A stretch of 64,000 bases of DNA from the IMG/VR virus record IMGVR_UViG_3300028676_000005, positions 124,001 through 188,000 of that record; one strand, given 5' to 3'. Below are positions 7,777 through 46,488 of the stretch, one piece after another. Position 1 is the first letter of the stretch; the number at the start of each line of letters is the position of its first letter. The notes under the pieces were generated by a model. That model saw nothing but the letters and a program-made list of their open reading frames with translations. It made no database searches and was not told the DNA's origin. A program made the translations under genes and the position numbers.

Positions 7777-8040
7777 TTAACTGACGGGTAGTTTCTTCTT
7801 AAATATCCAGTCATGCAAATCTAGCGCAAACACTATTCCAAAAGCAGCGCCCAGTCCTCCGCTAATAGCCGTAGTCCAGCTGGTAGTAAGAACTAGTGTA
7901 AAGGTAGCTACGTTAAAGACAAACATAAAGAAGGACGTTACAAACAACGTCCACCTGTGTCCACCAATAACGTTCTTGTGCTGAAACCCCTTTATACCAG
8001 CTGCCAGAAAAGCCAGGATAAAACTATAAACGTATATCAT
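7777..8040 (-). CDS. small multi-pass membrane protein
   Basis: 87 aa with three hydrophobic segments. Confidence 0.7.
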   Translation of the reverse strand: MIYVYSFILAFLAAGIKGFQHKNVIGGHRWTLFVTSFFMFVFNVATFTLVLTTSWTTAISGGLGAAFGIVFALDLHDWIFKKKLPVS

Positions 8041-19780: not shown

Positions 19781-20776
19781 ATGAGTTTATTATCGCCCTT
19801 GGGTATGGGGACAGTTACAGCGACTAAAGATACAGACACAAATGAGATTATGGTTTACGTTCCAGGACTGTTCCCGCAGGCTGAGGGTCGAACAGTTGCC
19901 AACGTAGAACGAGTAGAGCGCTCTAGTAAAAATGCTTATGGCGAAGACGTAAGTAGCATCAGCATGAAGTCCAACTCCATTCCAGCAGTTTGGAAGAAGA
20001 TGGACAACAGCAACCGGATATCCTCGCCAGACGTTCGAGAAGGTAGCCAGGTTGCCGTTTACAAGGCTTCCGGACAAAACCAGTACTATTGGACTCTTGA
20101 TGGGGTAAACCCTGAGACGTTCCGCTTAGAGACCGTCATGCATGGTTGGAGTGCTAACCCTAATCTTGATGAGAATACCCCGTTTGATGTAAACAACTTT
20201 TACATCTGGGTAATGGATACTCGAAGTGGGTTGGTGCAATTACGAACAACCCAGGCTAACGGTGAAGCAGCGGCTTTTGATATTCAGATTAATACGGCTG
20301 CCGGAACACTTACTGTTGGGACTAATGACTCGTTAACTACAATTAACGATCCAGATCAGTCATACACCTATCAGAACTCGGAAGGTGCGACGTTTAACAT
20401 TGCCAGGAAATCTGCTAGTCTTTATCTGCCAGAGAACTTACAGCTCTTTGCTGATGAAATGATTGCGATTAAAACTAAAGCCCTTTTTGTTCAAGCGGAA
20501 ACGGCTGAAGTGGATATCGGTCTTACCAAATGGAAAGGTAAGGTTGAACGAACTGGTGATACTGAACAAATTGGCAACTATACTCAGGTTGGCGATTACA
20601 CTCAAACTGGTATGTACAAACATATGGGTGACGTGGATCGTACTGGTAACAGTGTTAGCACTGGTACTGTTATTGGCATGACAGACGTTCGTACCATGAC
20701 TGTAAGTCTTAACTTCCACTTCCATGGTGGTGTTGACAACGGTAATGGTTACACTACTCCTCCTCTACCAAGTTGA
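19781..20776 (+). CDS. baseplate central spike (phiKZ gp164-like)
   Basis: 6-residue G-D/N-x-x-Q-x beta-helix repeats; C-terminal HFH (HxH) metal tip; divergent from sbcC. Confidence 0.75.
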   Translation: MSLLSPLGMGTVTATKDTDTNEIMVYVPGLFPQAEGRTVANVERVERSSKNAYGEDVSSISMKSNSIPAVWKKMDNSNRISSPDVREGSQVAVYKASGQNQYYWTLDGVNPETFRLETVMHGWSANPNLDENTPFDVNNFYIWVMDTRSGLVQLRTTQANGEAAAFDIQINTAAGTLTVGTNDSLTTINDPDQSYTYQNSEGATFNIARKSASLYLPENLQLFADEMIAIKTKALFVQAETAEVDIGLTKWKGKVERTGDTEQIGNYTQVGDYTQTGMYKHMGDVDRTGNSVSTGTVIGMTDVRTMTVSLNFHFHGGVDNGNGYTTPPLPS

Positions 20777-31927: not shown

Positions 31928-32051
31928 GGGTGTTGCTCCTGTTAATAATTACTGGAGTAGTTCGCATTTTATAGCCTACCCCTTAAAGTACGTTAAGGAC
32001 TATAGATAAACCCCCTTAACAATTTCATAGAATCCACTGGAGTCAGTCCCT

Positions 32052-33290
32052 ATGTACAGCTATAAAAGGGCTGTTGGTGTTAGTCGTCGTTCTCCCAAAG
32101 GAGATGAGTTACTGGATATTGCAGGTATTCCCTGTAATACACTTTTTACTGAATACAGTCGTTTGATTATTGTTGTGACCGATGTGTACAGTAATAAGGA
32201 CGTAGCAATAGACCTTCAGTACTATTTGGTAGACCTTGGGGTCTTCCCTGGTAACATACAGGCGTGGTTAGACACAAAGGCAACCACACCCCTCAAGATT
32301 GAAGATACTGTCCCTGGTGACCGTTATCGCTTCGTCACAACTCATGACATCCAGTACAAAGGGTTTAGCCTTTTGCCTGGTAATGCCCTGGCTGGTGACG
32401 ATCGACAAGACATGTACAACACAGCAGACGCTCCGGACATTCGTGTAGTTAAGACCGATAACTCCGAAGTAGATTTTGATGCATTGGTAACCCGCGGGTT
32501 GTGGACAATCAATGGTCACCTTGTTCGTGCTGTAAAAGGTAATCGTTGTGTGTACCTTCTCAATGCAGGCAAACACTTTAATGTGGATGATAACATCCAT
32601 GTTAATTACTTGAACTTCAATACGGTGAGTAAGCTTACTACTCGTCCTATTGCTGCTGAAGATATTAAGTTTGAGATTATTGGGGATGTCAAATATCTTC
32701 ATGTTTCAAGCAAGGTGTCTTTAAAGGACAAAACCGTCTGGATGAGTATCGGAGGGAGACTCTACCAGAACGATGTAGTCCAACCAAGAGGTAACGACAG
32801 TTTTGCTATCAAGCTCAATAAGGTAGACTGGTTCTCTGCTATCTTTGACTCTAAGCAACTGATCGATTTAAGTTCTGTTATAGACAAGGACCGTGATGTG
32901 GTAGGTAAGGATTTCTTCAGTACTGAGGAGTTCTTCACTAAGCTGCTTACAGATCTTTCTTCGTTTATGGTAATTTTTGATAATCCTCGGTTATATGCCT
33001 CGCTAGTACCACTGGTGAGTTATTTGTACCCGTTTACTTACCACACGGAAGAAACAAAACAGATCCCGTTACTCACGGGCAACGGCTTGCTTCCTAAGTA
33101 CTACGTCCGACGGATTATTAACCGTAGACTCTTGGACATTGATATTGGTGTTCAACGTGTTTACGCAAACAAAACAACCGGCATCCATAATGAGGGCAAC
33201 CTCTATCATGGTTTCACTAATCGACATGACCCTAGCAAACTGCACAGCGGATACCTGCTGTACATAAGGGCTATTGTCCAGGGGGATTAA
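32052..33290 (+). CDS. putative virion structural protein (possibly phiKZ gp130-like)
   Basis: 412-aa ORF, GGAG RBS; synteny only. Confidence 0.55.
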   Translation: MYSYKRAVGVSRRSPKGDELLDIAGIPCNTLFTEYSRLIIVVTDVYSNKDVAIDLQYYLVDLGVFPGNIQAWLDTKATTPLKIEDTVPGDRYRFVTTHDIQYKGFSLLPGNALAGDDRQDMYNTADAPDIRVVKTDNSEVDFDALVTRGLWTINGHLVRAVKGNRCVYLLNAGKHFNVDDNIHVNYLNFNTVSKLTTRPIAAEDIKFEIIGDVKYLHVSSKVSLKDKTVWMSIGGRLYQNDVVQPRGNDSFAIKLNKVDWFSAIFDSKQLIDLSSVIDKDRDVVGKDFFSTEEFFTKLLTDLSSFMVIFDNPRLYASLVPLVSYLYPFTYHTEETKQIPLLTGNGLLPKYYVRRIINRRLLDIDIGVQRVYANKTTGIHNEGNLYHGFTNRHDPSKLHSGYLLYIRAIVQGD

Positions 33291-33294
33291 ACCC

Positions 33295-33909
33295 ATGGGA
33301 CAGGAGATCAAGGCATTGTTATTTTTCGACAAGTTTCGATCAATAGCGACCTTCTTCGTTGTTCTTATTCTGGCTGTAATACTTGGAGTTCAATACTTCT
33401 TTCCTCGGCCGGTTAAGTTGGACCAAGAAGCACTCGCTTCGCTGCGTGATGCAACTGAGCAGATTCGTCAGATGGTAAAGACCGCTGACAACTTTGCTCA
33501 GGAGGATCAAGCGTTTAAGACAACCCTCCAACAGCGCATTACCGCGCAAAGCAAATTGAGAGGAGACAACTATGCCACGCTGGCTAGAATGTATGGTGTC
33601 CCGGATTTGGATGACGGTACTCTTGCTACCAATGGTGGCATTAATTACGGCATGCAACCACAACCCGACGGTCTCGGAAGCAAATACCTACCTCCAGGTA
33701 CAAGCGACCCAGGCCCAGTACGACACGTACAGCAACCAACTGACCTTACTGCAAAAGCAACTGACCCAGGTATCGCCGGAGTTTCGGGAGGTGACTCCAG
33801 ACCCACCTTCGGGGCGCGTATCGGAACTCTCCTCATTTCTGGAACGCAACAACTGTCTCCGCCAGGATCTCAGTCTTCCGGAAAAGGACCAGTGCTACCA
33901 GATCACTAG
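33295..33909 (+). CDS. putative i-spanin (Rz-like)
   Basis: Single N-terminal TM (IATFFVVLILAVILGVQYFF), coiled coil, P/G-rich tail; ATG 33295 after GGGGA. Confidence 0.7.
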   Translation: MGQEIKALLFFDKFRSIATFFVVLILAVILGVQYFFPRPVKLDQEALASLRDATEQIRQMVKTADNFAQEDQAFKTTLQQRITAQSKLRGDNYATLARMYGVPDLDDGTLATNGGINYGMQPQPDGLGSKYLPPGTSDPGPVRHVQQPTDLTAKATDPGIAGVSGGDSRPTFGARIGTLLISGTQQLSPPGSQSSGKGPVLPDH

Positions 33910-34060
33910 GGTAATTCTCATCCAGACCACACAAGTATTGGATGAGAAGGATATAACCCTCTGGGGCGCTAAGCAGACAATTCAGCAATTGGTCAAGAAC
34001 ATGAACCGTATCATTGACCTTGCCCCACGTCAGCCGACCACAACACTTAAACCACCCTAA
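33572..34060 (+). CDS. putative o-spanin (Rz1-like) lipoprotein
   Basis: Own AGGAG RBS; signal peptide with lipobox ITA-C (Cys28); +1 frame overlap with i-spanin. Confidence 0.75.
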   Translation: MPRWLECMVSRIWMTVLLLPMVALITACNHNPTVSEANTYLQVQATQAQYDTYSNQLTLLQKQLTQVSPEFREVTPDPPSGRVSELSSFLERNNCLRQDLSLPEKDQCYQITRVILIQTTQVLDEKDITLWGAKQTIQQLVKNMNRIIDLAPRQPTTTLKPP

Positions 34061-34089
34061 TTAGTAAAGATGCAAACATAAACCATATA

Positions 34090-34121
34090 CCCTCTAGGAG
34101 CCTGCAAGGGCTCCTAGAGGG
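34090..34121. terminator. bidirectional terminator
   Basis: CCCTCTAGGAGCC / GGCTCCTAGAGGG 13-bp stem between convergent genes. Confidence 0.75.
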
Positions 34122-34155
34122 GTTATAGCTGCATCGGCACATAACTAGTCAACTT

Positions 34156-34542
34156 CTACTGTTGTCTGTCATCAGGTTGGGCTGGTGGGCTTGGAGCAAT
34201 GATGTTAGCTACACGGCTACGGAAACGAGTCATGCTGCTGGCACCATTAAACAAAGTCTTCAGGGTCTGGTTAACAGACATCCAACTCCAGGCAATAAGG
34301 ACTGGCCCGACAACCATGATAAACATGCTCGTCTCGCTAGGCCATACATTGTGATCCCGAACGGAAAGGTAAATTACAGCAGAGTTGATCAGAGCAGTAA
34401 TACAAACCGTGATAGACGCAGTAAGACCACCCAGGTTACGAAGACGAACAGTCTCTCCCCCGAATACTTCTTTCTCTACGTCATTTTGGGTTTCGACAAG
34501 GCACTTCCCAGAAAGGCAGTTGTCATGCACTTGATCACTCAT
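34156..34542 (-). CDS. two-TM membrane protein, holin candidate (128 aa from MSDQVH)
   Basis: Two hydrophobic helices, basic C-terminal region, next to spanins. Confidence 0.5.
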   Translation of the reverse strand: MSDQVHDNCLSGKCLVETQNDVEKEVFGGETVRLRNLGGLTASITVCITALINSAVIYLSVRDHNVWPSETSMFIMVVGPVLIAWSWMSVNQTLKTLFNGASSMTRFRSRVANIIAPSPPAQPDDRQQ

Positions 34543-35173
34543 GAAAAACCCCATAGTGTTTGGCAAGCATTTCACAACGATACAGTGTAACAGCAACGCT
34601 ATCAGCACTGTGCTCGTCAATTACAGTGAGATCAAACCCCGTAGAGTCTAGATGCTCGTAAGCCATAACACCCTTGTGAACATCCTCTTTCTGGCTACCT
34701 TTAAAGTTAGCCCCAACAATGTCCTTTGCTGGATTAGGGAGAACACTACTCACATGAATGCCGCGACTAATGTAAGCATTTTGAGCCAAAGACACAAACT
34801 GGATCAACTGCTTAAAGGTTAAAACACCAGCCCCTAAGAAGTTGTCCTCGATGATACCCGTTAGATGACGTTCACGAAGTTCCATCTCTCCATCGTCATG
34901 TAACACAAACTCTGTGGTATAGTAGTCTAAAAGCTCTCCTAGAGCCCTGGCCAAGCACCAGCTGCGAGCAGCCACAGATGTTCCATTGGTATCGTCGTAT
35001 TGCACGGGTATGTCGTAGAGGACTTTATCTCCCTTGATGGTGTTTAAATACACCAGCTTGTAAGGAGTCTTAACTGTCAGATCCACATCAATAATGCACA
35101 CACCCATGTTTGTGGTAGAAGGGTCAATTCCTATGACCCTTACTATCTCAGGAGTTTTTAAGTCCTTAGACAT
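34535..35173 (-). CDS. ruvC: RuvC-like Holliday junction resolvase
   Basis: VIGIDPS...G, IIED, K...K..V, DEHSADSVAV. Confidence 0.85.
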   Translation of the reverse strand: MSKDLKTPEIVRVIGIDPSTTNMGVCIIDVDLTVKTPYKLVYLNTIKGDKVLYDIPVQYDDTNGTSVAARSWCLARALGELLDYYTTEFVLHDDGEMELRERHLTGIIEDNFLGAGVLTFKQLIQFVSLAQNAYISRGIHVSSVLPNPAKDIVGANFKGSQKEDVHKGVMAYEHLDSTGFDLTVIDEHSADSVAVTLYRCEMLAKHYGVFHE

Positions 35174-35778
35174 ATGTGGCCCTTAACGTTACCACAGTGC
35201 AGCTTGATGATAGCCACCAAAGGCGATAATCCAACTACAAAGTCTTTTGGGGCTTTCTTGCTATCCCCCAAATAAACCAATTCAAACCCACAAGCTGAAA
35301 ACTCACCAAAGGTCCCAGACATCCAGCGACCGTTGTAGTTATAGTTGTTTAAGAGGGTTGCCAATTCGTAAGACTCGGTGTTAACCGTTTCAAACTGTGG
35401 TAGCGGAACGCCCATAGGAAGTTTTTTCAAGAACTCCAGTTCTTCCGCCATGTCCACTTTAAGAGGCTCAAACAAAAAGGAGATGACTTCTTTAGGTGGT
35501 GTCAGACCATCTGGACCACCTTTGACTGGACCAGAGACCATGTTGATAAACGTCATCAACGAGTTACCAGTCTCAGCTTCAATAATGTCAATAACCAACT
35601 TGCCTTCAGTATTGCGATACGCTTGGCTTACCGCATATTTGGTTTGATCCAAACGGAAAGCCGGCATGTAAATGGTGCTAATCAGCTCAATGGCATCGTA
35701 GCTGTACATCCCCTCAGTAAGTGGGAGATGCGCATTAACGGAACCTAGCTGATCAGCCAAGGCGGCTAATGCGTCCAT
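35158..35778 (-). CDS. putative virion protein (206 aa)
   Basis: In structural operon; C-terminal W...VYLG...C.N..G pattern. Confidence 0.55.
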   Translation of the reverse strand: MDALAALADQLGSVNAHLPLTEGMYSYDAIELISTIYMPAFRLDQTKYAVSQAYRNTEGKLVIDIIEAETGNSLMTFINMVSGPVKGGPDGLTPPKEVISFLFEPLKVDMAEELEFLKKLPMGVPLPQFETVNTESYELATLLNNYNYNGRWMSGTFGEFSACGFELVYLGDSKKAPKDFVVGLSPLVAIIKLHCGNVKGHICLRT

Positions 35779-35780
35779 GA

Positions 35781-36728
35781 TCAGTTTCCTTGCGAAGCCG
35801 CACCGGCGGTAGAGTTAGTGAAGATCAGCATTGGTTCGCTGGCACCGTGGTCGTAGTCCATGTTCAGACGTTCGTTGTTCAGTGCACTACGTGCGTCACG
35901 TTCGGTGATGTAGTGTGCAGCAACAGCACTCTGTACTTCTGCAAAACGAATGGTACCACCGCCACCAGTTTGGCCGTCGATTTGAGTATCAACACCCCAG
36001 CAGACCATGGTCTCGTTGATAGCCGCATAACTGGCATCACCGTACTTCTTCTGGCAAGCGTTAGCCAACTCTTGCAGGTCGCCTTGGTTAAAGCTGCAAC
36101 CAAGAACAGCCGACGAGTTGATGTAGGTGTTGGAAACAGGAACGCTACCTTCGCTAGTAGTGGAGACAGGCTGTGGGTTAAACAGGCTGTCACGACTTGG
36201 CACGAACGGTACTGGCAGTTCGTTACCATTCTCGTCACGAGTAATCTTGTTGACTTCCGGGTTGTAGCGAGAGAAGTCAATCAGACGCAGGTAGTAGAAC
36301 ACGTAAGCTTGGCCATCGAAACCGTTCTCGATAACCCGCAGTCGATACTTGCCACGGTTAATGTTGTCAAAATCGTTATCAACCGGACGGCAGGCAACCG
36401 GGATATGAACAAACAAGTTCATGTCGATTGGTTGGTGCTGGTTAACCTTCATGATGGTCACACCCAGCGGGTTCTGACCAATGGCATTAGCACCACGGAT
36501 ACCAACACCAAAATACTTCAGCTCGAAGTTAGTCGGCATCTTTGGCCCGATAGATTCTTCGGCCATGATGTCGTAACGTTCATTGAGGGTGGAGTACTTT
36601 GGCAGGGTGAACCCTTGGCGCGTGGCCAGGCACTTCATGATAATGTTGCCGTAAGGCGTGTTGGTGGTTGTTTGTGTAGGTACTTCCGACCGGTTCTGGT
36701 CTTGAATTTCAGAGGCGGACAAAGCCAT
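35781..36728 (-). CDS. virion/baseplate protein (phiKZ gp139-like)
   Basis: STLNE, YFGVG..G, H.P, YYL, INE, ASEP; codon bias; synteny. Confidence 0.65.
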   Translation of the reverse strand: MALSASEIQDQNRSEVPTQTTTNTPYGNIIMKCLATRQGFTLPKYSTLNERYDIMAEESIGPKMPTNFELKYFGVGIRGANAIGQNPLGVTIMKVNQHQPIDMNLFVHIPVACRPVDNDFDNINRGKYRLRVIENGFDGQAYVFYYLRLIDFSRYNPEVNKITRDENGNELPVPFVPSRDSLFNPQPVSTTSEGSVPVSNTYINSSAVLGCSFNQGDLQELANACQKKYGDASYAAINETMVCWGVDTQIDGQTGGGGTIRFAEVQSAVAAHYITERDARSALNNERLNMDYDHGASEPMLIFTNSTAGAASQGN

Positions 36729-37155: not shown

Positions 37156-39444
37156 CTAGTTACCATCCTTCTTAGGAGGAGTCTGTTTAGCCAACACTCC
37201 GTAATAAGTTTTAGGGAGGTTAAACGTGTCATCAGGCGGCGTCAACAACCCGTAGTAAGTCCTTGGGATGTAGAACGTATCGTCAGGTGTGCCCAAAATG
37301 CCGTAATACGTGTCAGGTATTATGAAGTAGTTAATTGGGTCGTCATTACCAATAGAACGGATGTACGAGTTATCTTGAACCTTAACAGTGTATTCAAAAG
37401 AGTGCTTGAACTTGTCAACACTCTTAATGAAGTTGTTATCTTTCAGCTTGATGGTCGAAGCCATGTCCGCTTCAATAGTAGGCCTATCTGGAAACAAAAA
37501 GGCCAATACAGATTCAAGTTCTCGGATACCGTCCATGTTGGATTGGACGTTAAGCATCACGTTTCCAAAGTCAGCATCAAGACTATTGCCAGGGCCTGTC
37601 AGTTTACTGTCACCAACTGACACTTCGTTTGGAAGTTCGGTAACACCGATCTCATCAGCCATCTCTTTAATGAAATGGATGGTGTACGAAGAGAGCCGAG
37701 ACATGATATCGATAAGGTCGCTTTGCTTGACCCGCATGTTTGGTTGGATATTGGTATCCCAGCCAGTCACACGTTTAAAGATATCCCAGGCAAACGTTTT
37801 GCACTCAGCCGCTGAGTAGTCAGAGAAGTCCAGGTTGTAATCACGCAACAACAGATCGTACTTGGTATATTCGCCAAGCTTAACGAAACCTGAATCGTAA
37901 ACTGTCTTAGTGGCGTTTTTAACTCGAGCACGTTTATTCAGATCGTAAAACTGACTGTACATCTTCTTGTGTTTCCACATCGCCTCATAAACCTCAAAGG
38001 CGTACTGGACAAGATAGTCAGGGGCTACAAAGTTAGCAACTGGAAACCAAATGTTGCGGATATCGTAGGCAAGGTATTCGGGGTAAATAAAGTTCTTACC
38101 GCCAGCCTCATAGACGTCTGCAAGACTAGGTGGCTTAATTCGCATCACGTTCTGGTAATAAACTGGACCAATGTCAACAGGGTGGAACCCATTGCTATAA
38201 TCGACCAGATACCGCCAAATGTGATACGCATCGGCAACTGTCATCTTGATTTGTTTGCCAGTCTTTGGATCAGACACGACAACACGACCAGTGAACTTGT
38301 TATTGCCAACCAGATAGATCCATTCGTTATACACAACAGACATCAAAGTATCAGCATGGCGGTTGGTGTAGTCACGCATGCTAGATTCTAAGACTTTAGT
38401 AGGTAGTTCCGAGTGAAGACTGTACTTACCACGTTCTAAGGCGTCCTGTTGATAGATGGCCGTTTGATCGTAGTTGTCCCTGGCTAACAACTGCTGTTTA
38501 AGAATAATCTGTTCAGTGGTGTTGTAGGTGGGTTCCCGGCCGTAGTCCTCAATGAGATTAAGGTTAAGACGGCGATACAACGGAGTTGGACTAAGATCTT
38601 CCAGCTGCGTTGCGGTACCTTCCACCATGTCAAACTTAGCCAGCGGAATATTTGCAATAGTCAGCAAATTCTCCATCAGCTTATTAAACGTCAACGTCTG
38701 CCCGGGGTTATTCTTAATCCAGGCAATGTTACGAAACAACCACATGGTTTGTTCGCGGTTAAGACTATTTTTATATTTGGAGAAATCCCCGTAGGAATCA
38801 ATGTGGCTCCAGATATAAAAGTCATGACTGTGCCGAGTGTACATGTCTTCAATGCGAATTGTGTGAATTGCTTTGATGACGTCAGCCATAAGCAAACGGC
38901 TCATGGTAGGGAGAAACAAGTTATCCGTACCGATATATTCGTTGTTAAAAAGCTGACTGACTTCAGACTTAATAAAGTTTTGAAGCTTTGGAATTAACTG
39001 GTCCTCGTTCCACAATACTAACTTTTCATTGTACCGAAGAATCTTATAGTCATCGGCGGGAATCGTTTCCGCATAAGGGATCGGGGAGAGTATGCCGCGT
39101 ATCAGTGTTGGTTGAGCTGGATAACGTTCGGTAAGCCGTTTAAACCAATAACCGCCCTTAGCGTATTCACGGAAAGTAATCAGGTGAACACGCAGGTTCT
39201 CTTTGTTAAAGACGATTTCTTCGTCGTTATCCAGAGAGTTAACGGTCATTGGTACGTCGGTCTCATGATAGTCCCCGTTAAGGTTCATGTAGTACCGCCA
39301 AGTAGCTTTATCTTCTTTTACAATATAACCCACACGCTCTAGGGCCTGGTTATATCGTTTTGCTAACGCCTCATTTTTGATAACCATGGTTCTTGCAAGG
39401 GAAAAGATGTCCCTGAAGTACCTGTCTTTATCAGCATTATTCAT
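37156..39444 (-). CDS. baseplate wedge-type virion protein (phiKZ gp128-like) with three C-terminal TYYG repeats
   Basis: WRYY.NLNGDYH..D, HSHDF, TKVLES, LSSYT; divergent from portal. Confidence 0.7.
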   Translation of the reverse strand: MNNADKDRYFRDIFSLARTMVIKNEALAKRYNQALERVGYIVKEDKATWRYYMNLNGDYHETDVPMTVNSLDNDEEIVFNKENLRVHLITFREYAKGGYWFKRLTERYPAQPTLIRGILSPIPYAETIPADDYKILRYNEKLVLWNEDQLIPKLQNFIKSEVSQLFNNEYIGTDNLFLPTMSRLLMADVIKAIHTIRIEDMYTRHSHDFYIWSHIDSYGDFSKYKNSLNREQTMWLFRNIAWIKNNPGQTLTFNKLMENLLTIANIPLAKFDMVEGTATQLEDLSPTPLYRRLNLNLIEDYGREPTYNTTEQIILKQQLLARDNYDQTAIYQQDALERGKYSLHSELPTKVLESSMRDYTNRHADTLMSVVYNEWIYLVGNNKFTGRVVVSDPKTGKQIKMTVADAYHIWRYLVDYSNGFHPVDIGPVYYQNVMRIKPPSLADVYEAGGKNFIYPEYLAYDIRNIWFPVANFVAPDYLVQYAFEVYEAMWKHKKMYSQFYDLNKRARVKNATKTVYDSGFVKLGEYTKYDLLLRDYNLDFSDYSAAECKTFAWDIFKRVTGWDTNIQPNMRVKQSDLIDIMSRLSSYTIHFIKEMADEIGVTELPNEVSVGDSKLTGPGNSLDADFGNVMLNVQSNMDGIRELESVLAFLFPDRPTIEADMASTIKLKDNNFIKSVDKFKHSFEYTVKVQDNSYIRSIGNDDPINYFIIPDTYYGILGTPDDTFYIPRTYYGLLTPPDDTFNLPKTYYGVLAKQTPPKKDGN
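37192..37326 (-). repeat. three copies of a 17-aa-period motif
   Basis: FIIPDTYYGIL / FYIPRTYYGLL / FNLPKTYYGVL. Confidence 0.95.
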
Positions 39445-39469
39445 AAGTTAACTCGCTAAGGGAATTCAC

Positions 39470-42400
39470 ATGTCGTATAGATCTAGGTCCACTACGGTGG
39501 GCAATACCCCCGTAGATATCACTCAGGTACGGCAAAACTTTAGTAACATGCCTACGTATATTCGGTCCACTCTTCGCAACGCTGTTCCTCTTAATGGCGT
39601 GTCACCAGAAAAAGGTGATGTTGGCGGTGTAGAAACCGTTAACCAATATAAGTTACAGCGTCTCAGTGACGTTTTAAGCAACAACATCAATGCGGTGACT
39701 GACCTACGTGCCATTACGCCGTATGTGGACAAAGCAGAGCTGATTTGGGACACTATCTTGCTTTACCCTAACGGTAAGCAGGACAAGATTCTTACGTACA
39801 GCACGCTGCCTTCCAAGCTGAAGAACGTCGCATTGCATACAGAACTGCTTAAGGTGTGGGAAGAATACTTCACCAACGACTATAAGATCGAGGAAGATCT
39901 TAGCAAAATGATTAAGGATATCCTCTGGAATACGGGGAGTTACGTCCTTTTTAATCTTAGTCGTCCTGGTCTTGATTACCTGATTAATGGTAGTGAAGTT
40001 GACCCTAAACACAATTCTGAAAATGAGCCTCTTGACGCCAAAGCTAGAGAAGGTGCCGAGGCTTTCCAGCTTTACGAGCGTAAGTTCCGTGAAGCAGCTA
40101 TGAACGAGTTTAACAACTCGTTTGCAAACGACCCTACCAATAACAAGGTAAAGGTTCGTAACCTCGGTAAATTCATTAAAGACCCTAACAAGAAAGCCGC
40201 CCCGTCTGTTATTAACGGTTTGGAGCGCTTGCTTAAGGATGCCGGGTCTGTTCAGGAAGACGAGTATCGTCTGTTTGATAATGAGTTTGACCCTTCCAAC
40301 GATATTGATATCACAATTACGGATAACCCTGCTTGCTTGTTCCTACCTCGCTTTCACCAGAAGCGTCGAGAAGAGCAACTGGGTAGTGTAGTTGGTCAAG
40401 AAAACATCAACATGATGGTGGAACGCGCTCTTAAGAAAGACAAAGATCGCGATCCAATCGGTCCTAACGACACAGACAAAAAAAGAAAGAAGGCTGCTCC
40501 ATCTGACGCGACTACCCAAAACCTGGATTCGCATCAGGTTGCTGAGATTGCGCGGGAACTTTACCCAAGCCGAAACATTCGTTCTCAATCGATGCAGTTT
40601 GTTAAAAGCATTGATACTCTGTCAGTAGCACCTTACGGTCGTGGGTTGGTTTTCCATATCCCTAGTGAGGCATGTATCCCTATTCATCGTAATGGTGTAC
40701 GCCGGGCGAATCCGGATATCATTGTTCTGATGGATCGTGATACTGGTGAGTTCCTTAAGAACACTACCGACCCTGAGTACTATCAGTCCACTTCAGCTGT
40801 TAGAGGCGGGCTCAGTAACAAGAACAAGACTGGTAGCGAGAACGCTATCATCTCTAGTCTTCGTACTGTTCAGTCTGGTAAACCATGTGATTTCGACATG
40901 CGTGAGTTTGCAGACATTAACCGGTCTAACCTCATTCGTCAGTTCACGTCGGCTGTTATTAGCGACAAGGCTGATTCGGTAAGCATTACTCTGGACGAGG
41001 AAGTCAACAAGATCTTCTTGTCTCGTATGTTTGCTAAACAGGGTGTTCGTTGCTTGTATATCCCTGGTGAGGCTATTACCTACATGGCGCTGAAGTATAG
41101 CGAACTTGGTACCGGTCAATCGCTTACACAACTGGCTAAGATGCATATTGCCCGTCTGGCTGCTTTTGACGTCGCTGACACCCTGGCTAACCTCGAGGCT
41201 GCGCAACCCCATACGTTGATGAACATCACGCATGGTAAAGAGGATGGGGACCCTGAGAACACGGCTGCTATTGCACGGGCTTCGTTCTACGATAACAACC
41301 CTGGTCTTCATAGTCTGATTTCCTCTGCACAGCTTTCAGTACCAAGCATTGTGGAATCGATGCGTAACTCGTCGTTGACTATTAAAGTTAACGCCGGTGA
41401 TAACCCATTGGTAGCCGTTCCTGAAATCGACATGCAGCATATGGAGAAGAACCACTTTAAACCGGTGGATGACACTTCGCGTCAAAAAGTTATGAATGAC
41501 ATTGCTAACTACTTCCACACTCCTCGCAGTTGGTTGGACGTTAGTGACGATTCTAATAACTTCAAGATTGAAGCAATTACTGAACACGACATGGTTGTTA
41601 ACCAAGCTGCTAACTGGCAGGATACCTTGGCTGACTTCGTTGTGGACTTCATGCGTAAACATACTCGTGTAAACGAGCCTCTGTTGAACGCATTGGTCGA
41701 AGTAATTGTAAAAAACAAGAAGCTTTGGAAGCCAGAAGGTAGTAAAGAAACTATCGCTGGTGATGAGGGTCAAGTTGTAAACATGTTGTTGGCTGACTTC
41801 TTTACTGCGGTTAAGGTTAGTTTCCCTATTCCGTCCAGCATTGAGTCTACTGACAAACTGAAGAACCAGTTGGAAGCTGTTGATGCACTGGTTACTAAGT
41901 GGATGGAGATTGCAAGTGGTGGGGCTATCCTCACTGACATCGCTACCGGCCTTGGATTTACCGATGGCAAGGCAAGCGGTGAAACAATCCTCAAACATGT
42001 TAAAGCTTACTTTTACACCGAAGCATTTAAACGTTACAACATTCCAATGCCATTTGACGATGTTGTCAATGATGGTAAGAGTGGTGGTATTGCTTCTCTG
42101 GTACATGGTATTATTCATCAGCAGGCTAACTCGCAAGAGTTCTTTGTTCAATACATGACCGAGAAACTCAAGAATGATAAATCATTCCTGAAGTCTCACA
42201 AGGCTTTGCTGGATAAGCTGCGCAGCGACATTGATGAAGCCAGCGGCGAAGAAGAAGAAACTCAAGATGGTGGTTTAGACGGCGAGACTAGTCTGACTGG
42301 TGATGTTGAACCAGGTACTGGTGGCGATAACCTCGACGTTGATGCAGAACCTCCTGCTGAAGAAGAGGAAACTGAGGAGACTGGTGATACCAAACCAGGT

Positions 42401-44136: not shown

Positions 44137-46488
44137 TCAATCAGTTTTCAACAGTACCAAAGGTTTTTCGGCATTGATGTGACGCAGTGTTGCCACGTTA
44201 CGATCTTCGACGCTGTAGCTGAACAGCCACAAGTGTTCGGTGCTGCTGAAACGGATCAGGTGATCACGATAACCAGTGAGGCAATCTTCACCCTCTACTT
44301 CTACCTGCACTTCTACCAATTGGAAGAGTTCTGGAAGAACACTACGTTTGATGTACTGTGCAACGTTTGTTTCGGCATGAATCGGACCGCCGTCGTTTAC
44401 AACGTTAGCGATATAGAAATCGCGAATGAAGTAAACATTGTTGTCGTCTTTCAACTTGTCAATAGCTGACATGTTTTCCGGACTTTGGATGAAGCGGTTA
44501 ACTTTGTGGAACATTTTGAGGTGACTGGTAATGTAGTTGTCAGCTTCACTATCAATCAGGATGTTCCAAACCAGGGCGTCTTTGCCACGCAGGTGATCAT
44601 TGAGATCCTGAATGTCGTTAACGAAGTTCTTGATCTGAAGCTTGCCGCCACCGCCCTTACCTTCAAGAGCGTTGTAACCGCAGCTGTTTACCAGCCATTG
44701 GTTAGTGACATCAGTCAAACGACCGTTGATGAAATCGGCCAGCTTTTCTGGGATGATACCTTGTTCAAAGTAATGACGCAACAGCGCACCGGCTTCCACC
44801 AAGTTTGGACGCACATCCATTTCGCTGTCGGCGAAGAGGAATGGTAGGTCCTGGAACAATCGGGTTTTGATTTCCGGGCGTTCTACTTCGTACACGTCCC
44901 AAGAGCTGACGTCAGTGAACACGCAAGCAGCTTGGCCTTTCAGGCTGGAAGTTACTTTGTTGGTGATCAGATTGATGTCGGCGAGGATTGCACGCGAATC
45001 AGTGGACACCACTGGATCAGATACAACAATGGCTGGAGTGCCTTTGCCGTGTTTCTTGATCAGAGGGATTTTCACTACCAGGTCTTTGTCTGCGGCTTCT
45101 TCCAAAGATACTGGAACAATCGGCGGATACGAATCGCCGTCTGCGCGCATTTTGTCGAGCGGTGGTAACAGGAGTGCTGGGTTCTGGATGAGGATTGGCA
45201 CGTCAACGTTCTCCAAACGTACTGGGTAGCTAAACCAGCCATCATTCTTTTCCAGGTCGATGACAACTACGCGATAAATGTTGTGCGCAATTGCATGTTC
45301 TTGACGCTGGTCTGGATGCCGGCGGAACACGCGCTGAATGTACTTCCAGTCACCTTCTGCCACGTAATAGTGGTTAGTCCGGCCGGTGAACTTGAAGTAG
45401 TGGTTCAGATCGAACGTGTGTTTGTTTTGTATGTCGAGATTTTCCAGATCGTTACGGAAGTTACCCCAAGTCATATTGACCTCTTCATGTTGTGGTTGGC
45501 TAGCGGCCTGATATTGGTGTTCTTGATAACCACCGGTGTTGAACTCTTGTGCATTACGGCGAATCATTTCAAAAGTCTTTTGCAGCTCAATGTTTTGGCT
45601 GCTTGCATCTACCTTGCGGCCTGGTGTGAACCCAAGGAATTCTGCATATGTATCTGGATCGTTAAGTCGTGCATATTCAAGCGGTGTACTGATACGTTTT
45701 ACAAAGTCAAGCTGTTGATATGGGAAAGGTGCATCAAAGAAATCCCACATGATACTGAACTGCTCTTTGAATCTGTCCAGGTTGCTAAGAATATCTTCCA
45801 GTCGCTTTGGCAACCGATTAATCCAACCTTGACCTTTCTTGGTGTAGCAAATCCAGCTAAGGAACTCCAGGAGTAGCAAATGGCTAACAGCTAACTGCAC
45901 ACCATTAAAATAATCCTGCTGAGTCCACTCTTCTTTATTACTGCGACGCAACTCTTCGATCAGGATATAACCAAAGATAATCATACCCTGGTTTGCCACT
46001 GTCTTGATAAACTCAGGACGACGACTTATCTCATCTACAAAGTCTTTCTTTATTGGATCTACCGCACCGGTGATGTTGTCGAGAATAAACGAGTCACGAA
46101 CGGTGATGTAGTTGTGATAGAACAGCTTTTGTTCACGACGCATCATGAAGTTAAAGAACTGCACCATCGGGTACTCTGCCTTGGAGATGTAATACTCTTG
46201 GCTACCGGCATCAATCCCCCCACCGGCCTCCAACATCCCTGCTAGCACTTCGTTAGTTTCAATACCACCAGCACCAGTACGCCAGTTAAACCCGCCTACT
46301 GGTTGTCCATTGCGCTCAGCAGCACCACCCATGATTGCGCGGATAGTGCTGCCAGGGGCCATAGCACCTGATTGTACACCTAACGGTTGTTGCCCTCCCA
46401 TACCACCAATACCACGATGCTGGGCTGGCGGGTTTGCGTTGTCCAGATTTACCCCAAACTGTCTAGTAGAACGCAGTGAATCACTCAT
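44137..46488 (-). CDS. large hypothetical protein coupled to nvRNAP subunit gene
   Basis: 783 aa, ATGA overlap. Confidence 0.7.
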   Translation of the reverse strand: MSDSLRSTRQFGVNLDNANPPAQHRGIGGMGGQQPLGVQSGAMAPGSTIRAIMGGAAERNGQPVGGFNWRTGAGGIETNEVLAGMLEAGGGIDAGSQEYYISKAEYPMVQFFNFMMRREQKLFYHNYITVRDSFILDNITGAVDPIKKDFVDEISRRPEFIKTVANQGMIIFGYILIEELRRSNKEEWTQQDYFNGVQLAVSHLLLLEFLSWICYTKKGQGWINRLPKRLEDILSNLDRFKEQFSIMWDFFDAPFPYQQLDFVKRISTPLEYARLNDPDTYAEFLGFTPGRKVDASSQNIELQKTFEMIRRNAQEFNTGGYQEHQYQAASQPQHEEVNMTWGNFRNDLENLDIQNKHTFDLNHYFKFTGRTNHYYVAEGDWKYIQRVFRRHPDQRQEHAIAHNIYRVVVIDLEKNDGWFSYPVRLENVDVPILIQNPALLLPPLDKMRADGDSYPPIVPVSLEEAADKDLVVKIPLIKKHGKGTPAIVVSDPVVSTDSRAILADINLITNKVTSSLKGQAACVFTDVSSWDVYEVERPEIKTRLFQDLPFLFADSEMDVRPNLVEAGALLRHYFEQGIIPEKLADFINGRLTDVTNQWLVNSCGYNALEGKGGGGKLQIKNFVNDIQDLNDHLRGKDALVWNILIDSEADNYITSHLKMFHKVNRFIQSPENMSAIDKLKDDNNVYFIRDFYIANVVNDGGPIHAETNVAQYIKRSVLPELFQLVEVQVEVEGEDCLTGYRDHLIRFSSTEHLWLFSYSVEDRNVATLRHINAEKPLVLLKTD

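What the first reader, a model, noticed from the sequence alone, without database searches (positions are those of the whole stretch)
33295..34542. Overlapped two-component spanin facing a holin candidate, with no endolysin alongside
Seen: a single-TM protein overlapped over 338 nt by a lipoprotein gene with its own AGGAG RBS and ITAC lipobox; a two-TM gene converges on the same bidirectional terminator. The i-spanin has no Cys; the o-spanin has two periplasmic Cys. Known: Rz/Rz1 architecture. Automated annotation often drops one overlapped gene, and lysis genes of phiKZ-like phages are poorly defined.
Basis: partly seen in the sequence, partly recalled or inferred. Interest (0 to 1): 0.6.

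Follow-up and report, generated by a model that had tools for sequence, protein, structure and literature searches.

The report
Jumbo-phage spanin pair, possible holin
This is a real, conserved pair of overlapping phage genes that most likely break the host's outer membrane at lysis; the same pair was already catalogued in related jumbo phages, and the facing two-helix membrane gene is only an untested candidate for the missing holin.

Summary
There is a 204-aa protein with one N-terminal TM helix and no Cys (33295-33909). A 162-aa lipoprotein gene sits in the +1 frame (33572-34060), with AGGAG 6 nt upstream and an ITA|C lipobox, and overlaps it by 338 nt. A GC-rich hairpin lies at 34090-34121, and a convergent 2-TM gene at 34156-34542.

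The window comes from a 229-kb EL/RisingSun-like jumbo phage found in peat metagenomes. About 35 related loci keep the same layout: +1 frame, invariant lipid Cys, two further invariant Cys, hairpin, and a 2-TM gene after RuvC. Substitutions in the overlap spare the lipoprotein frame.

The pair is homologous to the EL and OBP spanins listed by Kongari et al. 2018 and to phage Miami's annotated i-/o-spanin. None of this family has been tested experimentally. It shows no detectable homology to the verified phiKZ spanins, but lies next to the same DUF7208-RuvC genes.

The endolysin, an EL gp188 homologue, is 112 kb away.

The 2-TM protein has class II holin-like topology and conserved linkage, but no holin homology and no test.

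Verdict: a new member of a known kind, of modest interest.

The parts
32052..33290 (+). Upstream gene of the same transcription unit: a 412-aa protein annotated as a putative virion structural protein in relatives (phrog_3337). Its stop lies 5 nt before the i-spanin ATG.
   Evidence: E 5e-103. Homologues precede the spanin pair in every related locus.
33295..33909 (+). i-spanin candidate, 204 aa. N-terminal TM helix at residues 17-35 (33343-33399), one periplasmic helix at about 44-99, a conserved Y-x-x-L-x-x-x-Y-G motif at 94-102, then an unstructured Pro/Gly/Ser-rich tail of about 105 aa. No Cys.
   Evidence: phrog_21243, E 9e-14. EL gp111 homologue. Alignment A3. AF2 model with mean pLDDT 51 and tail below 50.
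33561..33565 (+). AGGAG Shine-Dalgarno sequence, 6 nt upstream of the o-spanin ATG, inside the i-spanin reading frame.
33572..34060 (+). o-spanin candidate, 162 aa, in the +1 frame. Signal peptide at residues 1-27, lipobox I-T-A-C at 33644-33655 (lipid Cys28), Asn at +2, invariant Cys95 (33854-33856) and Cys108 (33893-33895). The mature part is predicted helical (34-65, 83-92, 102-150).
   Evidence: phrog_17307, E 8e-31. 67 phage records by tblastn. Alignments A1 and A2. AF2 mean pLDDT 71.
33572..33909 (+). The 338-nt overlap of the two reading frames, the longest among the loci compared (range 53-338 nt).
   Evidence: In a comparison with a 91%-identical relative, 16 of 24 differences are silent in the o frame but change the i frame, and 3 are the reverse.
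34090..34121 (.). GC-rich perfect hairpin in the 95-nt gap between the convergent genes. Probable transcription terminator, with a T-rich tail on the minus-strand side only.
   Evidence: MFE -37.8 kcal/mol, z -6.6. An equivalent hairpin is present in all 24 relatives' gaps that were folded, z -4.9 to -10.1.
34156..34542 (-). 2-TM membrane protein, 128 aa (132 aa from the alternative ATG at 34554). Holin candidate. TM segments at 43-61 and 72-90, predicted N-in/C-in, basic C-terminal tail. It is the last gene of the leftward operon, and its start overlaps the RuvC stop.
   Evidence: phrog_14084, E 2.5e-37, function unknown. 67 phage records. Alignment A4. Charge distribution. 56 representatives in 1.84 billion proteins.
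34535..35173 (-). RuvC-like Holliday junction resolvase, homologue of phiKZ gp140. Syntenic anchor.
   Evidence: phrog_159; tblastn against phiKZ gp140, E 8e-6.
35158..35778 (-). 206-aa protein of unknown function (phrog_20103) in the same leftward operon, between the DUF7208 gene and the RuvC gene.
   Evidence: E 3.4e-30. Homologues occupy the same place in Miami, RisingSun, OBP and other relatives.
35781..36728 (-). DUF7208 protein, homologue of phiKZ gp139. Syntenic anchor.
   Evidence: PF23838, E 4e-92; E 1e-34.

Best explanation
The locus is the outer-membrane-disruption module of an EL/RisingSun-like nucleus-forming jumbo phage (Chimalliviridae). Its endolysin is encoded elsewhere in the genome.

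Two genes are transcribed with a late virion gene and translated from overlapping frames. The i-spanin is a type II inner-membrane protein: an N-terminal TM helix, one periplasmic helix of about 55 aa, and a long flexible tail. The o-spanin is an outer-membrane lipoprotein of 134 mature residues that is mostly helical and carries two invariant Cys.

The inferred mechanism follows lambda Rz/Rz1 and T4 PseT.3/PseT.2. The two proteins meet across the periplasm through the peptidoglycan meshwork. They are held apart until the endolysin removes the wall. They then collapse and fuse the inner and outer membranes. The o-spanin Cys pair would supply the covalent homodimer links, as in T4, where the i-spanin also has no Cys.

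This family differs from the lambda type in one respect. The long helices sit mainly on the lipoprotein side, and the i-spanin contributes a weakly constrained, disordered tail.

The convergent 2-TM protein is the best positional candidate for the holin of this clade, with a class II-like N-in/C-in hairpin. That assignment is an inference at about 0.35 probability. The confidence of 0.75 given here is for the spanin reading of the pair.

Shown here: gene anatomy, conservation, which frame is under selection, homology to catalogued spanins, synteny, and the remote endolysin. Inferred: membrane localisation, binding between the two proteins, membrane fusion, and holin function.
For: **Anatomy.**

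**Conservation.** About 35 loci were compared: 15 GenBank phages, 7 metagenome contigs, and 13 IMG/VR loci. Wherever an o-spanin was identified, they keep:
- an i-gene with one N-terminal TM directly after the phrog_3337 gene;
- an o-gene in the +1 frame with an invariant lipobox Cys and never Asp at +2;
- exactly two further Cys.
The i-protein has no Cys in 26 of the 31 scored loci. Sources.

**Which frame is constrained.** In the overlap the o frame is the one under selection: 16 differences silent in o only, against 3 silent in i only. The alternative-frame ORF is therefore a real gene.

**Uniqueness.** It is the only credible lipoprotein ORF in the genome.

**Homology to catalogued spanins.**
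- EL gp111 plus its overlapped o-spanin, and OBP_140/139, are listed as overlapped spanins in the Kongari 2018 supplements.
- Miami CPT_Miami_052/051 are annotated i-/o-spanin with a LipoP SPII site.
- BLAST E-values are 1e-30 for o against EL and 5e-9 for i against EL.

**Cys pattern.** It matches T4, where the i-spanin has none and the o-spanin has two, both required (PMC6139136).

**Synteny.**
- In phiKZ, the DUF7208 (gp139) and RuvC (gp140) homologues are followed by the experimentally verified lysis cassette gp141-144.
- In PCH45, the gene after the phrog_3337 homologue is a different 1-TM protein with an apparently embedded Rz1-like lipoprotein ORF. It is called an Rz spanin and scored essential in a Tn-seq preprint.
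- The same slot therefore holds spanins of unrelated sequence in different lineages.

**Structure.** AF2 gives a helical o-spanin, and a helix plus disordered tail for the i-spanin.

**Endolysin.** It lies at G000 44613-45521. It is 47% identical to the EL locus at 201495-202355, which I take from memory to be gp188. It matches a PDB lytic transglycosidase at E 1e-18.

**2-TM protein.**
- It is found in a phage set of the same size and near-identical host make-up as the o-spanin's (67 records each), next to the spanin pair in every locus inspected.
- It has positive-inside charges.
- It is translationally coupled to a late operon.
- It sits next to the spanins even in distant members whose spanins have diverged beyond recognition.
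Against: - No member of this spanin family has been tested. The Kongari curators flagged the OBP pair as 'doubtful'.
- There is no Pfam or NCBIfam match to any spanin family. The PHROG families carry no function.
- Profile comparison finds no homology to phiKZ gp141 or gp141.1 beyond the TM and signal segments.
- The i-spanin has a single modest-confidence helix and a weakly constrained tail, unlike the two-helix Rz.
- SignalP and LipoP were not available, so the SPII site rests on pattern and conservation.

For the holin:
- no homology to any holin, including phiKZ gp142;
- it is not next to the endolysin;
- the genome holds several other small TM proteins, for example at G000 39427-39891, 81773-81997 and 111752-111994;
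- the family is unusually well conserved for a holin and exists as a fused 4-TM tandem duplicate in OBP-like phages;
- the phage-lysis specialists who annotated Miami left it 'hypothetical';
- its constant neighbour is RuvC as much as the spanins.
Confidence: 0.75

Rival explanations
1. The 2-TM protein is not the holin. It is some other conserved late membrane protein, such as an antiholin or lysis-timing regulator, a membrane anchor tied to DNA processing or packaging with RuvC, or a superinfection-exclusion factor. The real holin would be one of the other small TM proteins elsewhere in the genome.
For: - No holin homology.
- It always follows RuvC.
- It has strongly conserved soluble-face motifs, E-x-E-v-F-G and the V-W-P-S-E loop, which suggest a specific partner.
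- A tandem-fused 4-TM form exists.
- There are many other small TM ORFs in the genome.
- Left 'hypothetical' by the Miami annotators.
Against: - The N-in/C-in hairpin with a basic tail is classic class II holin topology.
- It occupies the position directly after RuvC where phiKZ begins its proven lysis cassette.
- It stays next to the spanin pair across the whole family.
- No TM protein lies next to the endolysin.
Confidence: 0.6
2. The lipoprotein is not a spanin. It is a periplasm-facing protein with another role, for example a receptor-masking or entry-exclusion lipoprotein like T5 Llp or Cor, and its overlap with the TM protein gene is just gene packing.
For: - The mature protein is large and helical, unlike the small proline-rich Rz1.
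- The curators' 'doubtful' comment on OBP.
- A far sub-threshold NCBIfam match to an Exc2 entry-exclusion lipoprotein (E 0.11, 13 bits against a cut-off of 35).
Against: - The strict pairing with a type II TM protein in the +1 frame is kept in all loci.
- The Cys pattern is T4-like.
- It is co-transcribed with a gene annotated as a virion structural protein in relatives (inferred late), not with early genes.
- Non-homologous spanins occupy the same slot in PCH45 and nearby in phiKZ.
- It is the only lipoprotein candidate in the genome, so the phage would otherwise lack an o-spanin.
Confidence: 0.12
3. The long overlap is an artefact. The i-spanin really ends functionally near residue 100, and the remaining 105 codons are an unselected read-through of the o-spanin gene in another frame.
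For: - Substitutions in the overlap are mostly non-synonymous in the i frame: 19 of 24.
- The tail is low-complexity, varies in length (total protein 128-204 aa) and is predicted disordered.
Against: - Every relative keeps the i frame open at least 53 nt into the o gene.
- The tail keeps a recurring basic/Gly motif in OBP-like phages.
- A 112-codon open alternative frame is unlikely by chance.
- In known spanins the i-spanin C-terminus is the part that contacts the o-spanin (established for lambda Rz/Rz1).
- This rival concerns only the tail. It does not affect the identity of the pair.
Confidence: 0.3

Closest known systems
Overlapped spanin pairs of Pseudomonas phages EL (gp111 plus an extended ORF110) and OBP (OBP_140/OBP_139), catalogued by Kongari et al. 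2018 (PMC6139136), and Klebsiella phage Miami CPT_Miami_052/051
   Same: - Sequence homologues: o-spanin 33-37% identity with E down to 1e-30; i-spanin about 25%.
- Same +1 overlap, same lipobox position, and the same two Cys.
- Same neighbours: the phrog_3337 gene upstream, then a hairpin and the convergent 2-TM and RuvC genes downstream.
   Different: - The window's i-spanin has a longer tail: 204 aa against 130-163 aa, giving a 338-nt overlap against 119-227 nt.
- Identity is low enough to count as a distinct genus-level lineage from peat.
- None of these pairs has been tested experimentally.
phiKZ gp141/gp141.1 spanins within the gp141-144 lysis cassette (Manohar et al. 2026, PMC12894885)
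   Same: - Overlapped i-/o-spanin pair in a nucleus-forming jumbo phage.
- It lies beside homologues of the same DUF7208 (gp139) and RuvC (gp140) genes.
- The phiKZ o-spanin was also mis-annotated as too short.
   Different: - No detectable sequence homology.
- In phiKZ the spanins, holin, regulator and endolysin are contiguous on one strand after RuvC.
- Here the spanins are on the opposite strand, the endolysin is 112 kb away, and gp142 and gp143 have no homologue found by tblastn.
T4 PseT.3 / PseT.2 spanins
   Same: An i-spanin without Cys, and an o-spanin with two periplasmic Cys about 11-13 residues apart (T4: 87 and 98; here: 95 and 108). A relatively large o-spanin.
   Different: The T4 genes are separated rather than overlapped. 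There is no sequence homology, and the disulphide chemistry is not tested here.
Lambda Rz / Rz1
   Same: Functional design: a type II inner-membrane protein plus an outer-membrane lipoprotein, encoded from shared DNA in the +1 frame.
   Different: - Rz1 is embedded, small and proline-rich.
- Rz has two helices and two Cys.
- There are no Pfam matches to the Rz or Rz1 families here.
Class II holins (for example S21 of phage 21) and the phiKZ class III holin gp142
   Same: The 2-TM protein is small, has an N-in/C-in hairpin and a charged C-terminal tail, is apparently a late gene (inferred from its operon), and lies next to other lysis genes.
   Different: - No sequence relation to either.
- It has a conserved cytoplasmic N-terminal motif.
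- It occurs as a 4-TM tandem fusion in some phages.
- It is not adjacent to an endolysin, and its function is untested.

Membership tests
Two-component spanin (functional class, criteria of Summer 2007 and Kongari 2018) | i-spanin: a single N-terminal TM domain with type II topology and the bulk of the protein in the periplasm | tested here: met
   One hydrophobic segment at residues 17-35, K/R before it, and 169 residues after it. The same holds in all relatives.
Two-component spanin (functional class, criteria of Summer 2007 and Kongari 2018) | i-spanin periplasmic domain is alpha-helical or coiled-coil | tested here: inconclusive
   AF2 predicts one helix at 44-99 with pLDDT about 50-64, then about 105 disordered residues. 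Kongari's tables list no coiled coil for the OBP i-spanin homologue but two for its o-spanin.
Two-component spanin (functional class, criteria of Summer 2007 and Kongari 2018) | o-spanin: SPII signal with lipobox Cys and no Asp at +2 (outer-membrane sorting) | tested here: met
   The pattern L-I-T-A-C with Asn at +2. The Cys is invariant in all relatives, and +2 is S, N, T, A or G, never D. The Miami homologue has a LipoP SPII call. LipoP and SignalP were not run here.
Two-component spanin (functional class, criteria of Summer 2007 and Kongari 2018) | o-spanin gene embedded in, overlapping, or immediately after the i-spanin gene | tested here: met
   Overlap of 338 nt in the +1 frame. The +1 frame and an overlap of 53-338 nt are found in all loci scored.
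Two-component spanin (functional class, criteria of Summer 2007 and Kongari 2018) | Periplasmic Cys available for intermolecular disulphide links | tested here: met
   Cys95 and Cys108 of the o-spanin are invariant. The i-spanin has none, which is the T4 pattern.
Two-component spanin (functional class, criteria of Summer 2007 and Kongari 2018) | i- and o-spanin bind each other through their C-terminal parts | tested here: inconclusive
   The complex prediction scored 0.24 against a mark of 0.34. The tool's verdict is 'no answer': neither for nor against.
Two-component spanin (functional class, criteria of Summer 2007 and Kongari 2018) | Required for outer-membrane disruption; complements lambda Rz-am Rz1-am | not testable with these tools
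   This is a bench test. It has been done for phiKZ gp141/141.1 but not for any member of this family.
Lambda Rz / Rz1 sequence families (Pfam) | Significant match to the Rz or Rz1 profile | tested here: not met
   No Pfam family at E up to 0.1, apart from one chance hit. This is not a member of the lambda families.
EL/OBP-type spanin family (phrog_21243 + phrog_17307) | Sequence homology of both partners, plus shared synteny | tested here: met
   PHROG E-values of 9e-14 and 8e-31. BLAST against EL gives 5e-9 and 1e-30. Synteny.
Holin (for the 2-TM protein) | Small membrane protein with at least one TM domain and a charged C-terminal tail | tested here: met
   128 aa, 2 TM segments, and a mean of 4.1 K/R in the 25 residues after TM2.
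Holin (for the 2-TM protein) | Homology to a described holin family | tested here: not met
   No Pfam or NCBIfam match. The PHROG family has no assigned function. No hhalign match to phiKZ gp142. Source names are absent among relatives.
Holin (for the 2-TM protein) | Encoded in a lysis cassette | tested here: inconclusive
   It is adjacent and convergent to the spanin pair in essentially all relatives, but 112 kb from the endolysin.
Holin (for the 2-TM protein) | [quoted passage not shown] | not testable with these tools
   Bench test only.

The most novel reading that the evidence does not exclude
The conserved 2-TM protein (phrog_14084, with its 4-TM tandem-fused form in OBP-like phages) is a new holin family. 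It would serve the whole EL/OBP/RisingSun/Miami branch of nucleus-forming jumbo phages. It is unrelated to the phiKZ class III holin gp142. It would work with a remote endolysin and with a spanin whose long helices sit on the lipoprotein side. Jumbo-phage lysis would then have been rebuilt at least twice around the same RuvC-adjacent locus.
Probability: 0.35. Interest if true: 0.5.

Novelty: new member of a known kind. Interest (0 to 1): 0.3.

Why it matters
Lysis genes of jumbo phages matter for phage therapy, for engineering and for timing of burst. Outside phiKZ they are still mostly labelled 'hypothetical'.

This analysis gives three things:
1. A clean rule for annotating the spanin pair across a large clade: the gene after the phrog_3337 homologue, plus a +1-frame lipoprotein ORF that gene callers routinely drop or truncate.
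2. Evidence that the spanin slot beside DUF7208-RuvC is shared between phiKZ-like, PCH45-like and EL-like lineages, even though the proteins are unrelated.
3. One specific, cheap-to-test candidate for the unidentified holin of the EL-like clade.

It does not reveal a new kind of system.

Tried and rejected
- **Megablast** of the 4-kb region against GenBank phages found no match. The phage has no close cultured relative.
- **Pfam and NCBIfam** scans of the three proteins gave only chance-level hits.
- **ESM Atlas** look-alike search for the 2-TM protein returned only unnamed viral clusters with scores of 0.82-0.84, which is uninformative.
- **The search for related loci** with the single o-spanin found only the same phage. 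An alignment was needed to reach further.
- **Complex prediction** on the periplasmic parts of the i- and o-spanin gave 'no answer' (0.24 against a mark of 0.34). This is not evidence either way.
- **hhalign** of the three family alignments against phiKZ gp141, gp141.1 and gp142 matched nothing beyond TM and signal segments.
- **hhalign** of the 2-TM family against the PCH45 2-TM protein gave a weak match (probability 16%), which is inconclusive.
- **tblastn** of phiKZ gp142, gp143 and gp144 against the whole genome found nothing. The endolysin here is of the EL gp188 type.
- **SLT (PF01464)** has no match in the genome. PG_binding_1 gave only a weak hit, which nevertheless pointed to the endolysin.
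- **The gene inserted between the 2-TM gene and the o-spanin in relative L024** was checked as a possible endolysin. It is an HNH homing endonuclease.
- **The Tn-seq preprint's supplements**, which might say whether the PCH45 2-TM gene is essential, are not held.
- **The look-up of sequencing runs** showed the phage in many peat metagenomes. The only RNA runs hold about 5% of the sampled words.

No other genetic code was used.
Full report
**Where the window lies**

The window is bases 124001-188000 of a 229,429-bp virus record with 46% G+C, estimated complete by CheckV. Its genes match the nucleus-forming jumbo phages. Closest are Pseudomonas phage EL and Erwinia phage RisingSun, then Miami, OBP and the Aeromonas and Vibrio jumbo phages. 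No cultured phage is close at the DNA level. Near-identical DNA occurs in many peat metagenomes and in a lake and a biofilm sample.

**Check of the observation**

- The i-spanin candidate runs 33295-33909. It is 204 aa, has one hydrophobic segment at residues 17-35, and has no Cys.
- The o-spanin candidate runs 33572-34060 in the +1 frame and is 162 aa.
  - AGGAG lies 6 nt before its ATG.
  - The N-terminus is a signal peptide ending in L-I-T-A-C28.
  - Cys95 and Cys108 lie in the mature part.
- The overlap is 338 nt.
- A perfect GC-rich hairpin at 34090-34121 lies in the 95-nt gap before the convergent 128-aa gene at 34156-34542.
- That gene has two hydrophobic segments (43-61 and 72-90), and its start overlaps the stop of a RuvC-like gene.
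- The hairpin has a T-rich tail only on the minus-strand side, so 'bidirectional' is not fully shown.

This is not chance. A six-frame scan of the whole genome finds three ORFs with a lipoprotein-like N-terminus, and the other two look spurious.

**Conservation**

I compared the locus in three sets of relatives:
- 15 GenBank phages;
- 7 complete metagenome contigs found through relatives of the 2-TM protein;
- 13 IMG/VR loci found with an o-spanin alignment.

Where an o-spanin could be identified, the layout is the same:
- a homologue of the 412-aa phrog_3337 protein (annotated as a virion structural protein in several relatives);
- then a protein with one N-terminal TM helix;
- then a lipoprotein ORF in the +1 frame, overlapping by 53-338 nt;
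- then a strong hairpin in a gap of 44-98 nt (24 of 24 gaps folded, z -4.9 to -10.1);
- then the convergent 2-TM gene and RuvC.

The lipid Cys and two further Cys are invariant. The residue after the lipid Cys is never Asp. The i-protein lacks Cys in 26 of the 31 scored loci. The one GenBank locus where BLAST and my pattern scan found no o-spanin, Proteus phage 10, was not examined further.

Two distant members (L045, L046) have spanins that diverged beyond recognition and lack the extra Cys. They still keep the overlapped lipoprotein and the same neighbours.

**Which frame is under selection**

I compared the window with a relative about 92% identical over this stretch (64 of 766 nt differ) (L023). 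The overlap holds 24 nucleotide differences:
- 16 are silent in the o frame but change the i frame;
- 3 are the reverse.

The lipoprotein ORF is therefore a real, constrained gene. The last 105 or so residues of the i-spanin are only weakly constrained. This fits two other results. The tail is low-complexity and varies in length among relatives. AlphaFold2 predicts a TM helix, one helix at 44-99, and a disordered tail for the i-spanin (mean pLDDT 51). The o-spanin is predicted to be largely helical, at 34-65, 83-92 and 102-150 (mean pLDDT 71).

The window and L023 have the longest overlap seen. This comes from a tail extension rather than a different design.

**What is already known**

This family is not new.
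- The supplements of Kongari et al. 2018 (PMC6139136) list EL gp111 with an overlapped o-spanin, and OBP_140/139, as overlapped two-component spanins. Each is a singleton family. A curator's note calls the OBP pair 'doubtful'. The tables show coiled-coil segments in the OBP o-spanin but none in its i-spanin.
- GenBank calls the OBP genes 'lambda Rz1-like'.
- The Center for Phage Technology annotated the Miami homologues as i-spanin and o-spanin with a LipoP cleavage site.
- PHROGs v4 carries both families without a function.
- I found no experimental test of any member.

The Cys arrangement parallels T4 PseT.3/PseT.2, where both o-spanin Cys are required.

**Relation to phiKZ**

Manohar et al. 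2026 (PMC12894885) showed by complementation that phiKZ gp141/gp141.1 are spanins, gp142 a class III holin, gp143 a regulator and gp144 the endolysin.

phiKZ gp139 and gp140 are homologues of the window's DUF7208 and RuvC genes. The phiKZ cassette therefore begins exactly where the window has its 2-TM gene.

The spanins and holin themselves show no detectable homology between the two lineages.

In Serratia phage PCH45, the gene after the phrog_3337 homologue is yet another 1-TM protein, with what looks like an embedded, proline-rich lipoprotein ORF. A Tn-seq preprint calls it an Rz spanin and scores it essential.

Unrelated spanins in the same slot are good indirect evidence that the window's pair has that function.

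**The endolysin**

The genome's soluble endolysin candidate is a 302-aa protein at G000 44613-45521, directly downstream of a virion RNA polymerase beta-subunit gene.
- It is 47% identical to the EL locus at 201495-202355. I take this from memory to be the characterised endolysin gp188.
- It matches a solved lytic transglycosidase at E 1e-18.
- It lies 112 kb from the spanins.
- EL shows the same separation: spanins near 116 kb, endolysin near 201 kb.

A second lytic domain (GH19) sits in a 2645-aa virion protein near 58 kb.

**The 2-TM protein**

It belongs to phrog_14084, which has no assigned function. It occurs in a set of phages of the same size and near-identical host make-up as the o-spanin's (67 records each), always as 'hypothetical protein'. 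It has only 56 cluster representatives among 1.84 billion proteins, so the family is confined to this phage lineage.

Points in favour of a holin:
- an N-in/C-in hairpin by the positive-inside rule, and a basic C-terminal tail;
- last position in a presumably late operon;
- constant proximity to the spanins;
- positional equivalence to the start of the phiKZ cassette;
- no TM protein next to the endolysin.

Points against:
- no homology to any holin;
- strongly conserved soluble-face motifs;
- a tandem-duplicated 4-TM fused form in OBP, D3, PS2, Kc263, pEt-SU, Survivor, Yubaba and ZPAH34, whose two halves are 31% identical in OBP;
- several other small TM ORFs in the genome;
- its constant neighbour is RuvC as much as the spanins.

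I put the holin reading at about 0.35.

**Annotation behaviour**

In all 7 complete metagenome loci, the gene caller kept only one of the two overlapping genes: the i-spanin five times and the o-spanin twice. In 9 of 15 GenBank relatives, the o-spanin is cut down to its non-overlapping 3' part or is missing.

**Verdict**

However, it is a new member of a family catalogued in 2018 and annotated in several genomes. What remains open is experimental proof for this family and the identity of the clade's holin. The facing 2-TM gene is a reasonable, testable candidate for that holin.

No alternative genetic code was invoked.

Noticed in passing
L016:3165-3815 (OBP_138); also D3, PS2, Kc263, pEt-SU, Survivor, Yubaba, ZPAH34 loci: In OBP-like and Aeromonas jumbo phages, the 2-TM protein exists as a single polypeptide of about 216-236 aa made of two tandem copies (4 TM). 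The two halves are 31% identical in OBP (E 2e-12). This suggests the 2-TM form works as a dimer.
   Followed up: partly
L024:3972-4937: One metagenomic relative carries a 321-aa HNH homing endonuclease inserted in the convergent gap between the 2-TM gene and the o-spanin. It widens the gap to 1120 nt.
   Followed up: yes
L044:20186-20722 (Serratia phage PCH45): At the syntenic position PCH45 has a different 178-aa 1-TM protein. An apparently embedded, proline-rich lipoprotein ORF (S-L-V-G-C box) lies within about 20215-20652 and is not annotated in GenBank. A 167-aa 2-TM gene (L044:18448-18951) lies between RuvC and this pair.
   Followed up: partly
G000:C1:44613-45521 (outside the window; L006:880-1788, minus strand): The probable endolysin (EL gp188-like, with two N-terminal PG-binding-like repeats and a lytic transglycosylase domain) is the gene immediately after a virion RNA polymerase beta-subunit gene. 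RisingSun shows the same adjacency (its endolysin match adjoins an RNA polymerase beta-subunit gene).
   Followed up: partly
G000:C1:58086-58244 (outside the window; L007): A glycoside hydrolase family 19 domain lies inside a 2645-aa open frame. It is probably the virion-borne cell-wall-piercing lysin, analogous to phiKZ gp181.
   Followed up: no
window 34535-34554: The 2-TM gene has two in-frame ATGs (34554 and 34542), both embedded in the last codons of RuvC. The pair recurs in several relatives (M-G-F-x-M). This may simply reflect conservation of the RuvC C-terminus rather than a holin/antiholin dual start.
   Followed up: partly
window 7777-8040 (G000 131777-132040) and G000 39427-39891, 81773-81997, 111752-111994, 119266-120768: Several other small ORFs with 1-3 predicted TM segments are scattered through the genome. 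Two adjacent 2-TM ORFs lie 5 kb downstream of the endolysin. These are alternative holin or membrane-protein candidates and were not examined.
   Followed up: no
L045:5591-6377 and L046:5504-6311: In two distant lineages, gene callers cut the o-spanin at an internal Met, so the pair looks 'separated'. Extending the frame upstream restores a signal peptide and lipobox and an overlap with the i-spanin. These o-spanins lack the two extra Cys.
   Followed up: partly
window 32000-36000: Near-identical DNA is held by many peat metagenome runs from separate studies, plus one lake-water and one biofilm run. The host is unknown.
   Followed up: no
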